Shown: positions 4,746 through 10,124, numbered from the whole stretch's first letter. The stretch: DNA of 63,796 nucleotides, filler included, from Octopus bimaculoides (GCF_001194135.2; 7 parts of 6 records of this genome joined end to end with filler, not necessarily neighbours in it); one strand, 5' to 3'. Numbers and translations are program-made. The notes: a model not told the origin generated them from the sequence alone.

Positions 4746-7700
4746 TCATTATTCAGTTTTATTTCTATATTTCTTACCAACAGAGAAAGAGCCGGTTTCT
4801 AACCTAGATCCAAGGCTACTTCATTAGAATTTCAACAACATCATCAGGGTATGCATGTATGTATGTATGTATGTGTGTGTGTATGTATGTACGTACGTAC
4901 GTATGTATGTATGCATGTATGTATGAATGTATGTATGTATATATAAATGCAGATTTGAATGTTTTATGTATGCATTCTCCTGCATGTAGTTGAATATCTA
5001 GACATGCTCATACATATTTAAATGCTAAACTTCTGGAAAGTTTTACAGATTCTTACAGTTCCAGTGATAGACTGGATCTGTAGTCTTCGAATTAACTTTC
5101 TTCTTTCTGGTTTTGAGAAGCTTAATTTCTCAAGATAGACATTTAGGCAGTGTGTTACATATCCCAGGGCCCCAATAATTACAAGTATATATCTGAACTT
5201 GTAACCTGGATAGAGTAACTCCAGCTTTCTCAATAATTCAACATAGGTGTTCTCCTTTTCACTGATCTTCAGTTTTATGCTAACATCTGCTGGGCAGCTA
5301 ATTTCCACAACTGTGCACAGTTTCTTTTCTCTATCCCAGATCATTATATCAGGTCTGTTGTGCTTAAATTTTATTGATGTCTTCACTGCTACATTCCACC
5401 AGTATTTCTTTTCTTTATTAGTTTCTATGGCTTCTATCATACTATGGATTCTCATTTCTTTGTCCTCGGGGTTATCCTTCCGACGGATTTCATTATAGAG
5501 CGTCGTAGCTACAGCCTCATGTCTCATCCGTACATAAAACCGTGATGACATTCTCGGATAATTGCTTATGATGTGGGTGATATCTTCAGTGTCAACTCCA
5601 CAAAATCTGCTTTTGTATATCTATCCATTTTCTGCATCAGGTACTTGGTTGATATTTCCTGTTTCTTGATTGCAAACGCATATCCTTCAAAGTAGGAGGT
5701 TATTGGTCCATGATAAACTGCTTTGATAATCGATGTTGCTACTATCACGGAGCTTTCTACTAACATATCCATGCATAGTCTTCTGCTCATATAGGCTCAT
5801 CCTTTCATTCGATGACACGTTACGGTAGAGTCGTGCGACTTCTTTGGGCAAGTATTCTAAGTTATCAGACAAAAAGTATTGCTCAATGAGCTGCCTTTTA
5901 TGTCTTATGATGTTATCAGCCTCATGTATGCAAACTTGGACAAGGGATGCACTTCGACACTTGGTTGTTAAAAGATGTTGCCGAAGGGATATGATGCGAC
6001 ATTCAAAGGCATTTTGGATCGATGTTAAGCCTCAGCCACCTTGTGTTCGTTTTATGTTGAAGTGATCTATATCACTGTTTATGTGGAAATTATGTGTACT
6101 TGTTTAGTATTTTTCGAGTTTTCACATCAATGGCTCAGATAGCATCAAGCATCGAATCAAGCAGCCCGAATGTTGGTATGAGTACTGGCACTGCAAATAC
6201 AGTATTTTATTAAATGCAGAGAGTTCTGAGGTCTAAATTTTCTTTATTCGGCTGTAATATTCTTTAGTGACGCGTGTTTTGTTACAGGTGCCTTTGAAAG
6301 ATATATTTTCATCCACCCCTAGCTACCTGTGCCATTCCCCGTCAGATACAAAGGAAACAGTCAAATCATTGATGGAGATGTTACTAGTCTGGTTTATAGT
6401 TTTCCCCCTTTTAACAAACATAACAACATTTACCCTGACCAAACTGCAACCCTACATCCTTTGAGAATATTGTAACTAGGTCAAGACTCTCTTTCATTTC
6501 ATGAATATTCTTTGCATAAAGTTTTAAGTCCTCCACAAAGTGACAGTGTGTAATTTTGGTATTTCTGTTTCCTTGTGAACCAGTGAGATATCCTTCAGAC
6601 TTCCATAACATGAATGTCAAGGGGTTTACAAAAACTATACACAATATCACAAAGAGACTGTCTCCTTGGAATATGCTTTTGAGATACTGTATTCTATCAG
6701 TGATAATACAGTCACTCTTTGTGTTTAATTTCAAGACAGTGGCCCACAATGAAGTCAAGTCAGCTATAACTTATTGGAACTTTAGCAAGTTGAAGGGCTT
6801 CTAGCATCCATGAGTGGGGAACAGAATCAAAGGCATTCTTGTAGGCTAGCCACATTGAAACTAGGTTTCTCTTATGCTCTCGCACCTCTGACATCACAGT
6901 TTGGTTGATTAACAATTGCTCGGTACATCCCCAGACCCCCTTCTTCCCAGCTGCTTGTTCTGCTGGGATAATGTTATTGGTTTCAAAATGGTCCTAGAGG
7001 TAGAGGTTTAAACATGCTGTATATATATTATACATTAAGTTCTGGCATGCAATTGGCCGGCAGTTTTTTGCCATGTGGGTGGTTCTGCATTTGGGGATCA
7101 ATTTTGTCTCTGCNNNNNNNNNNTTGGGGATCAATTTTGTCTCTGCCAGAGCTAACCTGTGTGGTATCCTACTGTTCCCAATGAAAGCTTGCTTGTACAG
7201 ATTGATAAGATATAGTCGGTAGAATGTTAGCTTCTTGTACCAATATCTACCAATCAAGTCTCTTCCAGGTGCTTTTCCATCCTGGAGATTCTAGATCACA
7301 GTTGCAAGAGTTTCACCATCAATGTTGTGTCTTGGATGTAACGCAGGAGCAATAACATTTTCGGATTTCTTCCAGCCACAGAGCATCTTGGTTAAACTCC
7401 TTCTCTTCACTCCAGATTTTCCTTCAGAAGGAGTCTATGTTTTCTCGTGAAGGAGCTTCCGTGATGCTTGCGGCTCCGCCTCTCATGTCCCAGTATACTG
7501 CTACCTGGTTGCGGTTAAATTTTTTGTTTATTGTTCTTCTTTCAATTATTCTCTTATGATGTCGGAGCTTTTCACTGACAGCTTTTAGCTCCTGCTTGAG
7601 GGTAATCAGTTTGCAAGTGAGTGTCCTCATTTTGCTGTCTCCAAACATTATTTCTATCACCTTCTTTACTTTCTGTGGGTGGGACGTATAGCGATTTGCT

Positions 7701-8077
7701 CGTTTGCATGCAGTAAGCTTCATTACATGACTGGTGGTCTTCCATAAAACAGTTATCTTTTTTTTCTGTCTTCAAAACCCATGATGGTACTTTCTTTGTT
7801 ATTTCGGTTTTGTTTACTTTTTGAATATCGTCCATGTACTGTTTTACAGTAGTAGTCAGAGCATAGAGACAGGCGTTAAACTGCCGGTATGTGGGTTCCT
7901 CACACAGTTGTAAATACTCATCACCAAATTCGTTGACGGCTTTTAATACCGTATCTGGTAGGTTTTTACTTACTTTGGTAGAGAATACTCTCTCCTCGAA
8001 GGAGTCCTTCAAAGCCAGAGTTATTTTTTCTCGGAAAATTTCAGTAAGGGCACACATTTAACCGGCATATAATCCTG

Positions 8078-8120
<43 letters not shown>

Positions 8121-8866
8121 TTACTACTACTACAATAATCGCAGCGGTTGTGCCTGCTGTTTACCATAGTCGTAGTAGGATGACAGTGGTCAGTTACTTG
8201 AACCAGTAATGTAGTTTGGCTGATAGGCACCATGGAATCTGTTGGAAAGTCGCTAGCTGCGAAACCACGTAATGGTCTTATATCATTCACGTTTCCGTTT
8301 TTGTTTACAGAGTTGGGAAGAAGGTTAATTTTCGATTTTTTAATAAAGCTACTGTTACTAACCTTCTTTTTATGTTCCACAAATGTTGCTTGTTGACGTA
8401 GTTACCTCGTAGTAAAATGATTTGATTCTGGAAGCAGATTGTCCCAATATGATTTCAGTGGATTTCATATAGCCAACAGTGGGGTTTTGTTTCACTTTTA
8501 AGTAGCAGTTAAATAGATCATTATTCAATTCATAACTCCAAGAGAAATGAGTTTTGTAGTTAAGGTTTCTTCTGTAACTACAGCTAGAAAGAATTTGCTT
8601 ATCTGTTGTGCTGTTGTTTTCGTTTTGTTCCTCGGTTGTGTTGTTGTTGATGTTGTGTCTAGCTATGTTGTTTGTAGTAACTCTCTGCATGCTAAATTCA
8701 AGTTTCAGACGAAAATCACTACGAATAAAAGCCTCCCTCAGTCAATTCATCTGAAGATTAACCAGTTATTTAACAAGGCTGATAGTTGTGGCTCCAAAGT
8801 TGGAGATAGTATTCATCATATTTTCGATAGTCTCCCACGCCAAATACGCGACTTGTCGCTTCGAGT
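4746..8866 (-). mobile_element. Near full-length R4/Dong-clade non-LTR retrotransposon (RLE type), inactivated, flanked by (CATA)n
   Basis: Minus-strand fragments occur in canonical order: N-terminal WSYELNNDLFNCYLKVKQNPTVGYMK (8370-8690); RT motifs CRPIACQNLMYNIYT, EQLLINQTVMSEVREHKRNLVSMWLAYKNAFDSVPHSW, IFQGDSL and FVEDLKLYAK (6411-7257); FEGYAFAIKKQEISTKYL; then RHEAVA...KYWWN...RPDIMIWD...VEISCP...KENTY...IIGALG (PD-(D/E)xK endonuclease, 5018-5551). (TATG)n lies at 8867-8903 and at the 3' end. Confidence 0.92.
5018..8690 (-). pseudogene. Disrupted single ORF of the R4/Dong-like element (RT, CCHC knuckle, RLE endonuclease)
   Basis: The ORF is broken by stops and frameshifts into the track pieces 8370-8690, 8021-8380, 7572-8057, 7424-7723, 6994-7257, 6411-6758, 5687-5872, 5566-5790 and 5018-5551. 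Confidence 0.88.
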
Positions 8867-10124
8867 TATGTATGTATGTATGTATGTATGTATGTATGTA
8901 TGCATGCATGGTTGCCACAGTAACGGAGTATGTACAATACATATTAATTAGAAAGGTCCATATATTTCAATGATCATTTATCTCATTTTGCTTTTTATCC
9001 TAAACCGAAGTCGTAAATTGTGTGTTTAAATATAGTTGTTGTCCATTAAAGCTGCTTTTAAACATTGATAAAATCATATCTTATAGATCTATAACATGAT
9101 ATCCATAACAGTGCAAATACATTATATGTATAAAAAGAGTTCTTTGCAATAAATGTATATTAATGTCGCAGAGCGTTATTTGCAATGAAAAAGCTGTTTA
9201 ATGTGCTTTGATGTATTGATGGATTTTGTATAAAACAGTAAATAATAATCAGCGTCAGAGAAATGTAATGGCTTACGTCAGAAAAATCAGAAAATATAAT
9301 TGAGGAATCTGAATTTGTTTATTTCCACGATCTAATCAACGACTTGTTTAAAACTATATATTCTCTAATGTGTTTGCCCCTTTGACAAGGTTGCTGAAAC
9401 ATTTTGATACCAACCTGCAACAGACAGCCCCTGGGTTTATTATAAAACGTCTTACTGAAAGTAATCAAAATTAAAAATTTCAGTAAAAATTTCAGGTTAA
9501 TTCATGCTTGAAATACTATTTTAATAATGATAAAGTTATTTTATGAAATTGTTAATTGTTTTCAAATTTAATGAGAACAAAGTCTATATTTTAACACACA
9601 TATAGAAACAAAATACTAAGGAAGATTTGACTGTTATTTCTTGCAGATTCTGATGGTTTCGTCACCAGGGACTCTCTCTCTCATTGACTCATATGAATAA
9701 AGTTGTGTGATGTGGTAGTAATGTGAATTCTAACGTTTCGGATATGGCCTTTCTTCAACGATAAATGATGTAAGATAAATGTTATTCAATAAAAAAAGAA
9801 CTATGGAAGTAGAATGTATTGCGTTATCTATTCGGTATTAGAGTACTGGGATAAGTTATAAATTACAGACAAAACAAAAAAACAAGCGAGAATCTGTATT
9901 ATTAGGCAGTATTAATGCTAGAAGCAAATGTCAACTCATCATTGATGTGGCATTAGTTGACATTAAGCTGAGTGAACAATTCTATTTTGGATTCTCGTCA
10001 ACTGAAGAAAACGGGTTTCACATCCATCTCAATACAGGCGTGAACCGACCAATGAATTTGATAGAAGGTTTACTTAATATTGATTTTAAATTCTGGCATA
10101 AGGCCAGCAAGTTCAGGTGAGTGC

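What the first reader, a model, noticed from the sequence alone, without database searches (positions are those of the whole stretch)
4746..8903. R4/Dong-clade retrotransposon apparently specific for the (CATA)n tetranucleotide microsatellite
Seen: four copies of one RLE-type element (1003-1816, 1877-2221, 4746-8866, 51474-51852) have four different 5' breakpoints: the full 5' end, the CCHC region, mid-endonuclease and late endonuclease. Each 5' junction is at or within about 10 nt of a (CATA)n run on the element strand, and each 3' end (...AAAACTGAATAATGA-like) runs into CATA or a degenerate version of it. Established: RLE elements are often sequence-specific, R4 targets rDNA, and Dong targets (TAA)n. 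Inference: this family targets (CATA/TACA)n, a tetranucleotide target I do not know for this clade. That would imply a distinct site-specific endonuclease/RT that could be reconstructed from a consensus.
Basis: partly seen in the sequence, partly recalled or inferred. Interest (0 to 1): 0.78.

Follow-up and report, generated by a model that had tools for sequence, protein, structure and literature searches.

The report
Retrotransposon family that targets CATA microsatellites
The window holds one full-length but broken copy and two shortened copies of a Dong-like jumping gene that sits in (CATA)n repeats, always in the same orientation. Distant relatives in other animals do the same, so this is a real but modestly novel change of target within a known kind of site-specific retrotransposon.

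Summary
All six ends abut (CATA)n written on the element's sense strand.

The gap at 7114-7123 is an unclosed overlap. The 23 nt on either side of it are identical. Removing 33 nt keeps the frame and restores collinearity with seven relatives.

The full-length copy is dead, with many stops and frameshifts. [quoted passage not shown] That is the R4/Dong layout.

The decisive evidence comes from elsewhere. Eight further copies at seven loci, 36-48% identical, include one from the cephalopod Argonauta hians. They carry (CATA)n in sense orientation at their ends. Sister families carry (CTTA)n. More distant relatives (27-35%) carry (TAA)n, the Dong signature. A neighbour-joining tree separates the tetranucleotide lineage from the (TAA)n lineage with 100% bootstrap.

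Insertion into (CATA)n is therefore an inherited trait of a lineage, not chance.

I found no description of this target for R4/Dong in the searchable literature. (ACAY)n is a known target of the unrelated Waldo elements. Repbase and Dfam could not be checked. Verdict: a new variant of a known kind, of moderate interest.

The parts
8867..8902 (-). 5' flanking target repeat, (CATA)9 on the element's sense strand, preceded by unique sequence
8691..8866 (-). 5' UTR of the full-length copy (176 nt), starting ACTCGAAGCGACAAG
   Evidence: No Rfam family found. No HDV-like fold found with a crude descriptor.
5018..8690 (-). Single ORF of the element, now broken by many stops and frameshifts (a dead copy)
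   Evidence: Three-frame translation. Stitched 768-aa RT-to-RLE read-through. Most reads of the family differ from this copy at many sites.
8460..8576 (-). N-terminal Myb/SANT-like motif (YRRNLNYKTHFSWSYELNNDLFNCYLKVKQNPTVGYMKS), no zinc finger
   Evidence: (hhalign 96.8% to the same region of (TAA)n-flanked Dong-like elements) and 87. Literature: PMC7998251.
8073..8140 (-). Internal (AGT)n run that encodes a serine run inside the ORF. It is a microsatellite within the element.
   Evidence: Depth spike.
6414..7146 (-). Reverse transcriptase domain (Pfam RVT_1). The catalytic box reads FVEDL here and FVDDL in relatives.
7114..7146 (.). Assembly gap (10 N) plus a duplicated 23-nt overlap. This is an artefact. 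Removing these 33 nt gives the true continuous, in-frame sequence.
5555..5611 (-). Degenerate CCHC motif (SRFCGVDTEDITHIISNY). Two of the four ligands are lost. The motif is intact in copy 1 and in relatives.
   Evidence: Copy 1 was read by eye.
5018..5551 (-). Intact 177-aa terminal ORF holding the PD-(D/E)xK restriction-like endonuclease (RHE...NRPDI...VEISCP...EKENTY)
4746..5017 (-). 3' UTR, with an internal degenerate (CATA)n run (4855-4940) and a terminal ...GAAATAAAACTGAATAATGA
4733..4745 (-). 3' flanking remnant of the target repeat, CATACATACAAAT on the sense strand
1003..1816 (+). 5'-truncated copy 1, from just upstream of the CCHC motif to the 3' end (80% to the full copy). Flanked by (CATA)n at 985-1003 and 1817-1876.
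1877..2221 (+). 5'-truncated copy 2, from the late endonuclease to the 3' end (86%). It lacks the internal 3' UTR repeat block. It lies head-to-tail with copy 1 in the same microsatellite and is followed by CATATATACATA.

Best explanation
This is a family of RLE-type non-LTR retrotransposons from a sister lineage of Dong. It inserts orientation-specifically into (CATA)n tetranucleotide microsatellites.

Shown here:
- Copies with different 5' truncation points are bracketed by (CATA)n on the sense strand. This holds in this genome and in relatives that are only 36-48% identical.
- Copies often lie head-to-tail within one repeat tract.

Inferred, by analogy with R2 and Dong:
- The protein recognises the repeat through its N-terminal domain and/or endonuclease.
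- It nicks the (TATG)n strand.
- It uses the 3'-OH to prime reverse transcription of the element RNA (target-primed reverse transcription). The RNA's 3' end probably carries read-through CAUA repeats that can anneal to the nicked strand.
- Incomplete cDNA synthesis gives 5'-truncated copies, whose 5' ends are joined back into the repeat.

The full-length copy in the window is an old, inactive copy. The family has hundreds or more mostly truncated copies in this genome.
For: In the window:
- Three copies and six junctions are all next to sense-strand CATA. CATA runs make up only 1.7% of the piece, and 8 of 9 runs are tied to the element.
- For the full copy, the long repeat is on the 5' side ((CATA)9) and only 2.5 units remain on the 3' side. 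This is the opposite of what a self-made 3' tail would give.

In relatives:
- L001 has CATA on both sides.
- L002 has a ~170-nt (CATA)n tract at the 5' end.
- L003 has it on both sides.
- L086 has it on both sides.
- L087 has it at the 3' end.
- L091 holds a 5'-truncated copy with CATA on both sides, plus a second copy downstream.
- Argonauta hians L088 has a 5' (CATA)n and a 3' CATACACACA....
- In all eleven copies CATA is on the sense strand (two-sided p about 0.001).

Target tracks phylogeny:
- Sister families carry (CTTA)n: L004, L006, L089, L090.
- At least 16 more distant loci carry (TAA)n.
- The tetranucleotide clade has 100% bootstrap support.

Other copies in the same genome. Contigs of public runs join truncation points equivalent to 5325 and 5497 directly to CATA repeats, and a 3' end equivalent to 4749 to CATA (table 5c). 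Read depth rises at least 10-fold from the 5' to the 3' end, as expected for 5' truncation.

Architecture.
Against:
- No empty (pre-insertion) site was examined.
- In a repeat target, duplications of the target and the exact nick position cannot be read.
- Part of the flanking repeat could be templated by the element RNA rather than pre-existing.
- The window copy itself cannot be active.
- No biochemical data exist for any R4/Dong endonuclease.
- Clade assignment lacks true R4, Dong, Hero or NeSL reference sequences.
Confidence: 0.8

Rival explanations
1. The element is not target-specific. Like many LINEs, it makes its own microsatellite tail: the RT slips on the RNA 3' end and lays down (CATA)n at each new insertion. 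The 5' CATA runs would then be tails of neighbouring copies, or coincidence.
For: The 3' UTR itself contains a CATA-like run (4855-4940). Copy 2's 5' repeat is also copy 1's 3' repeat. Tandem copies are frequent.
Against: The full copy has its long repeat on the 5' side, next to unique DNA, and almost none on the 3' side. Copy 1's 5' flank is a compound (CA)n(TA)n(CATA)n tract with no element upstream. L001, L002, L003, L086, L088 and the truncated L091 all have 5' CATA tracts that are not preceded by another copy in the sequence seen. The same two-sided pattern holds for (CTTA)n and (TAA)n relatives.
Confidence: 0.1
2. Chance or passive accumulation. The genome is rich in microsatellites, and the element merely survives in such repeat-rich, low-recombination DNA, as proposed for Drosophila Waldo-A/B near CA repeats.
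For: The window is full of CA, TA, GA and compound repeats.
Against: CA, TA and GA runs are individually about as abundant as CATA runs in the piece, yet the junctions touch only CATA, at 0-1 nt distance and always in one orientation. Relatives from other assemblies repeat the pattern. Sister families switch cleanly to CTTA or TAA.
Confidence: 0.03
3. The element is specific for (CATA)n but belongs to another RLE clade (Hero or NeSL/Togen-like) rather than R4/Dong.
For: Some HERO families and the NeSL-related Togen families are microsatellite-specific (PMC4640811). No reference sequences of any RLE clade other than R2 (PDB) could be compared here.
Against: The nearest outgroup found, at 27-35% identity over the whole protein, is a large set of elements flanked by sense-strand (TAA)n, the Dong hallmark. 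The N-terminal domain is homologous to theirs. It is of the zinc-finger-free Myb/SANT type described for R4/Dong (PMC7998251). R2 proteins match only the RT, at E about 1e-20. Octopus genomes are reported to hold abundant ~4.2-kb 'Dong-R4' LINEs (PMC13282606).
Confidence: 0.12

Closest known systems
Dong (R4 clade; Bombyx mori, Anopheles, Biomphalaria and many others)
   Same: [quoted passage not shown] Orientation-specific insertion into a simple-sequence repeat. Frequent tandem copies and 5' truncation. Full-length protein homology at 27-35% identity.
   Different: Dong's target is the trinucleotide (TAA)n (PMC3812793, PMC7998251). This lineage uses the tetranucleotides (CATA)n or (CTTA)n and forms a separate clade with 100% bootstrap support. 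An HDV-like 5' ribozyme is reported for Dong (PMC3774820). A crude descriptor recovered such a fold in two (TAA)n-flanked relatives but not in this lineage.
R4 (Ascaris and other nematodes)
   Same: Same clade by the literature, with the same RT plus RLE layout and the same N-terminal Myb-like domain (PMC7998251).
   Different: R4 inserts at one site in the large-subunit rRNA gene. No rDNA is involved here. No R4 sequence was available for direct comparison.
Waldo (R1 clade: WaldoAg1/2, WaldoFs1)
   Same: Same target motif. (ACAY)n with Y = T is (CATA)n (PMC3812793).
   Different: Waldo encodes an N-terminal AP-type endonuclease and belongs to an unrelated clade. This element has a C-terminal PD-(D/E)xK endonuclease and no AP endonuclease. 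The shared target is convergent.
Togen (NeSL-related) and microsatellite-specific HERO families
   Same: RLE-type elements specific for microsatellites (PMC4640811).
   Different: Togen's target is (TG)n. These are different clades by the literature and were not compared directly here.
R2
   Same: RT and RLE domains are homologous (PDB R2 proteins, E 1e-20 to 1e-5). R2 is the model for the inferred target-primed reverse transcription mechanism.
   Different: R2 has N-terminal zinc fingers and targets 28S rDNA. Neither applies here.

Membership tests
R4/Dong clade of RLE non-LTR retrotransposons | Single ORF with RT followed by CCHC and a C-terminal PD-(D/E)xK restriction-like endonuclease | tested here: met
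   RVT_1 match. R2 RT homology. CCHC and RHD...NRPD...E..P...K motifs in relatives, and in the window's terminal ORF and copy 1. The window's full copy has this ORF broken.
R4/Dong clade of RLE non-LTR retrotransposons | N-terminal Myb/SANT-like domain and no N-terminal zinc fingers (PMC7998251) | tested here: met
   Conserved W-x-x-E-x-N...Y...GY-x-K-R-L-K-x-x-W motif. hhalign of the tetranucleotide lineage against the (TAA)n lineage gives 96.8% probability, E 2e-10. No C2H2 pattern upstream of the RT in 8 proteins. Pfam itself gives no Myb hit.
R4/Dong clade of RLE non-LTR retrotransposons | RT phylogeny groups with reference R4 and Dong, apart from R2, Hero, NeSL and CRE | tested here: inconclusive
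   No reference sequences were available. As a proxy, the sister group consists of (TAA)n-flanked, Dong-like elements, and R2 is much more distant.
R4/Dong clade of RLE non-LTR retrotransposons | HDV-like self-cleaving ribozyme at the 5' end (shown for R4 and Dong, PMC3774820) | tested here: inconclusive
   No Rfam hit, even at E <= 1. My crude descriptor finds the fold in (TAA)n-type L005 and L012. It does not find it in the window element, L001, L002, L086 or L088. The hits in L003, L004 and L089 are at shuffle level. The descriptor is not validated.
Dong in the strict sense | Insertion into (TAA)n | tested here: not met
   All junctions here and in the close lineage are (CATA)n or (CTTA)n. 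(TAA)n is found only in the more distant clade.
Waldo (R1 clade) | N-terminal apurinic/apyrimidinic-type endonuclease, two ORFs | tested here: not met
   There is a single ORF and the only endonuclease is the C-terminal RLE. Pfam gives only RVT_1 and a weak zf-RVT hit.
Waldo (R1 clade) | Target (ACAY)n | tested here: met
   (CATA)n is (ACAT)n. The shared target is convergent.
R2 | N-terminal zinc finger(s) plus Myb, and insertion at the conserved 28S rDNA site | tested here: not met
   No N-terminal C2H2 pattern. No rRNA match in the window. The flanks are microsatellite.

The most novel reading that the evidence does not exclude
A previously undescribed, widely distributed sister lineage of Dong targets tetranucleotide microsatellites. 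It has switched target at least twice between (CATA)n and (CTTA)n, which differ by one base per unit, and away from or towards (TAA)n. If so, intact natural proteins (for example P0002, P0004, P0011 for CATA, and the L004/L090 families for CTTA) form a ready-made series for mapping how a Myb-like domain plus restriction-like endonuclease reads a short repeat. They would also be candidates for repeat-directed insertion tools.
Probability: 0.45. Interest if true: 0.6.

Novelty: new variant of a known kind. Interest (0 to 1): 0.5.

Why it matters
Site-specific RLE retrotransposons (R2 and its kin) are the model for target-primed reverse transcription and are being developed for gene insertion. 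How they change target is therefore of practical as well as evolutionary interest.

For the R4/Dong clade, the literature I could search lists only rDNA and (TAA)n as targets. This work adds a lineage whose families cleanly use (CATA)n or (CTTA)n. The pattern tracks phylogeny, and intact ORFs are available from public assemblies. That gives a natural experiment in retargeting.

It also shows convergence with the unrelated AP-endonuclease Waldo elements on the same ACAT repeat.

For cephalopod genomics, it means that part of the abundant 'Dong-R4' LINE load is confined to one class of microsatellite. This may interrupt, seed or extend those repeats and complicate their assembly. The artefactual gap and the repeat-bounded contigs seen here are examples.

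Tried and rejected
- Read laying on the whole element was swamped by microsatellite reads. It gave depth, private mutations and a few informative joints, but no clean junction census.
- An exact look-up of the window's 177-aa ORF found no record, so no alternative assembly of the locus was obtained.
- The protein database holds no close copy (above 53% identity) of this family, so further copies from the same genome could not be fetched.
- The Rfam gathering scan gave nothing. The E-value scan gave only low-complexity mir-297, mir-1277 and mir-3149 hits on (TGTA)n, which I rejected as artefacts.
- Two versions of an HDV-like ribozyme descriptor were tried. The first missed even the Dong-like positive controls. 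The second found them but nothing convincing in this lineage.
- Pfam does not recognise the N-terminal domain.
- Supplements of the two Kojima papers hold no protein sequences usable as clade references.
- Literature searches for an ACAT- or CATA-specific RLE element found none. The Penaeus paper only lists ACAT among microsatellites.
- ARAGORN finds no tRNA.
- I considered that L089 was a counter-example because no microsatellite of at least 15 nt was present. Inspection showed a short degenerate TTACTTACTTACTCACTTAC exactly at its 5' end.
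Full report
**What is in the window.** The piece (1-13698) is AT-rich and full of microsatellites and short interspersed repeats. On the minus strand, 8866 to 4746 is a 4.1-kb element. blastn against the piece finds two more partial copies on the plus strand: 1043(1003)-1816 at 80% and 1877-2201(2221) at 86%. 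Read on the element's sense strand:
- The full copy starts ...GCATG(CATA)9|ACTCGAAGCG and ends ...AAATAAAACTGAATAATGA|CATACATACAAAT.
- Copy 1 starts (CATA)n|AAAAGGGATAAAG, just upstream of a preserved CCHC motif, and ends ...AGACAATGA|TATA(CATA)n.
- Copy 2 starts directly after that same repeat, in the late endonuclease region, and ends ...CTGAATAAGGA|CATATATACATA.

Perfect CATA runs of three or more units cover only 201 of 11,937 called bases. Eight of the nine runs lie at an element junction or inside the element's 3' UTR, and they always lie on the element's sense strand. The fourth copy is outside this piece.

**The assembly gap.** The 23 nt immediately left of 7114-7123 are identical to the 23 nt immediately right of it. 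This is the signature of two contig ends that overlap but were not merged. As assembled, the reading frame passes through the gap but carries an 11-codon insertion (…AETKLIPXXXXAETKLIPK…) that none of seven relatives has. Removing the 10 N and one 23-nt copy (33 nt, a multiple of three) gives …LALAETKLIPKCRTTHMAKNCRPIACQN…, which aligns to all relatives without an indel. I take the two sides as continuous and in frame, with no sequence missing.

**Anatomy.** Three-frame translation shows one long coding region (8690 to 5018) broken by many stops and frameshifts. This copy is dead. A stitched read-through of 768 residues matches Pfam RVT_1. Its best matches among solved structures are R2 proteins, in the RT region only (E 1e-20 to 1e-5). 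The last 177 codons are still open and carry the RHE…NRPDI…VEISCP…EKENTY pattern of a PD-(D/E)xK restriction-like endonuclease. The CCHC motif before it has lost two ligands in the full copy. It is intact in copy 1 and in relatives.

The N-terminus carries a conserved motif, W-S-x-E-L-N…Y…G-Y-x-K-R-L-K-x-x-W. Intact relatives of 1136-1197 residues have no C2H2 pattern upstream of the RT. This zinc-finger-free Myb/SANT-like N-terminus, followed by RT and a REL-endonuclease, is the architecture described for R4/Dong (PMC7998251).

**Abundance.** Raw reads and contigs of public runs from the same organism show depth rising at least tenfold from the 5' to the 3' end of the element. Most reads disagree with this copy at many positions, including a 2-nt difference at 7327 in about half of them. 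The family therefore has many mostly 5'-truncated copies, hundreds or more. The absolute number depends on an assumed genome size and differs between read-based and contig-based estimates. Better-preserved copies than this one exist.

In the same output, contigs join positions equivalent to 5325 and 5497 directly to CATA repeats, and a 3' end equivalent to 4749 to CATA. These are further copies with CATA at their junctions. Only a few of the many joints were listed.

**Relatives elsewhere are the decisive evidence.** The protein search found no close copy, with a best identity of 47-53%. Fetching the DNA around the relatives gave the following.
- L001 (P0002, intact 1158 aa): (CATA)n on both sides.
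- L002 (P0004): about 170 nt of (CATA)n at the 5' junction.
- L003 (P0001): both sides.
- L086 (P0011, only 36% identical): both sides.
- L087 (P0006): 3' end.
- L091 (P0017): a 5'-truncated copy with CATA on both sides, and a second copy downstream.
- L088, the cephalopod Argonauta hians: (CATA)n at the 5' end and CATACACACA… at the 3' end.

In every case the repeat reads CATA on the element's sense strand. That is eleven of eleven copies, counting the three in the window (two-sided p about 0.001).

Other members of the same lineage carry (CTTA)n in the same two-sided, sense-oriented way:
- L004, with further copies in tandem.
- L006.
- L089, with a short degenerate run.
- L090, a truncated copy with a 300-nt tract.

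These are documented.

A scan of metagenome contigs for more distant relatives (27-35% identity) returned loci whose flanks are overwhelmingly (TAA)n on the sense strand. Examples are L012, with two copies head-to-tail in (TAA)n, and the moth Dendrolimus locus L005. [quoted passage not shown]

**Phylogeny.** A neighbour-joining tree of 33 proteins (772 columns, Kimura distances, 100 bootstraps, midpoint-rooted) splits the sequences into two groups. One is a tetranucleotide-flanked clade with 100% support. The other is the (TAA)n-flanked group. Within the tetranucleotide clade:
- CATA is found in both main branches.
- CTTA appears in two places: P0007/P0008 (100% support) and L006.

This pattern implies at least two target switches. 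The N-terminal domains of the two groups are homologous (hhalign probability 96.8%, E 2e-10).

The tree is a distance tree without outgroup references. The deep split is robust, but the order of the switches is not.

**Mechanism.**

Shown:
- Orientation-specific association of both ends with one repeat, including ends created by 5' truncation.
- Tandem stacking of copies in one tract.
- Inheritance of the trait across a deep lineage, with clean switches between repeats.
- A protein with a DNA-binding-type N-terminal motif, RT and a restriction-like endonuclease.

Inferred, from R2 biochemistry and structures and from what is published on Dong:
- The protein binds the repeat and nicks the (TATG)n strand.
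- It primes cDNA synthesis on the element RNA from that nick. The RNA probably ends in CAUA repeats from read-through, which would help register the RNA on the target.
- Second-strand events or premature termination give truncated copies that are joined within the repeat.

The full copy has nine repeat units upstream and only about 2.5 downstream. This argues against the idea that the repeat is merely a tail made by the element.

Dong and R4 have an HDV-like ribozyme at the 5' end (PMC3774820). I found none here by Rfam or by a crude descriptor that does recover such a fold in two (TAA)n-type 5' ends. I regard this as unresolved rather than as a difference.

**Comparison with what is known, and novelty.** The closest known family is Dong. 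The architecture, lifestyle and homology are the same, but the target and the clade differ. The same ACAT repeat is a known target of Waldo elements, which are AP-endonuclease elements of the R1 clade (PMC3812793), so the shared target is convergent. Other RLE lineages with microsatellite targets are Togen, which uses (TG)n, and some HERO families (PMC4640811).

Octopus genome papers report abundant, recently active 'Dong-R4' LINEs averaging about 4.2 kb (PMC13282606; PMC8967140). They say nothing about insertion targets. None of my nine literature searches found an (ACAT)n- or (ACTT)n-specific RLE element. Repbase and Dfam, where such a note would most likely sit, were not available.

I therefore class the finding as a new variant of a known kind, with roughly even odds that specialists have already catalogued it informally.

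**Limits.**
- No genome-wide junction census and no empty sites.
- No true clade references.
- The host organism is coded. It is probably an octopod, judging from the Argonauta relative and the repeat landscape, but that is an inference.

Noticed in passing
window 10120-10252 and 10337-10469 (also about 10790-10920 and about 12990-13080): Two 133-nt direct copies, 80% alike, spaced 217 nt apart. They look like SINE copies. Similar pieces seem to lie inverted further on. ARAGORN calls no tRNA.
   Followed up: partly
window 13167-13235 and 13557-13646: A (CT)n run and a (GA)n run form an inverted pair of microsatellites, 82-92% complementary, around a 324-nt unique segment.
   Followed up: no
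window 4766-4940 and 1684-1796 versus 2185-2221: The element's 3' UTR exists in two forms. The full copy and copy 1 carry an internal CATA-like run plus about 85 nt of unique sequence before the last 20 nt. Copy 2 lacks this block and goes straight from ...CAAATCTG to GAAATAAGACTGAATAAGGA. This may be a subfamily difference or an old internal insertion or deletion at a repeat.
   Followed up: partly
window 8073-8140: An (AGT)n microsatellite inside the ORF encodes a run of about 20 serines. It causes a large depth spike in the read data.
   Followed up: no
window 3076-3138, next to the 927-N gap at 3139-4065: This is the only CATA-type run not tied to a visible element copy. It is in minus orientation and runs into a large assembly gap, where another copy could be hidden.
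   Followed up: no
window 4319-4328 and 11716-12529: Two further assembly gaps lie in the piece, outside the finding. The first sits at the end of a (CA)n-like run.
   Followed up: no
L003 2400-2500 and 6765-6870: Beyond the CATA tracts, both flanks of this relative share the same (GATA)n plus about 70 nt of unique sequence. The element therefore sits inside a longer-period tandem array.
   Followed up: no
L004, L012, L086, L091: Two or more elements lie head-to-tail within one microsatellite tract, as copies 1 and 2 do in the window.
   Followed up: partly
L005 2861-2900 (Dendrolimus) and L012 77-150: The 5' ends of these (TAA)n-flanked Dong-like elements fit a crude HDV-like ribozyme descriptor. 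In L005, P1 (CCCCCCC/GGGGGGG) starts at the first element base. The tetranucleotide lineage gave no convincing fit.
   Followed up: partly
window 4851-4923 and other (TGTA)n runs: Rfam E-value hits to mir-297, mir-1277 and mir-3149 all lie on low-complexity repeats and are far below the gathering scores. They are artefacts.
   Followed up: yes
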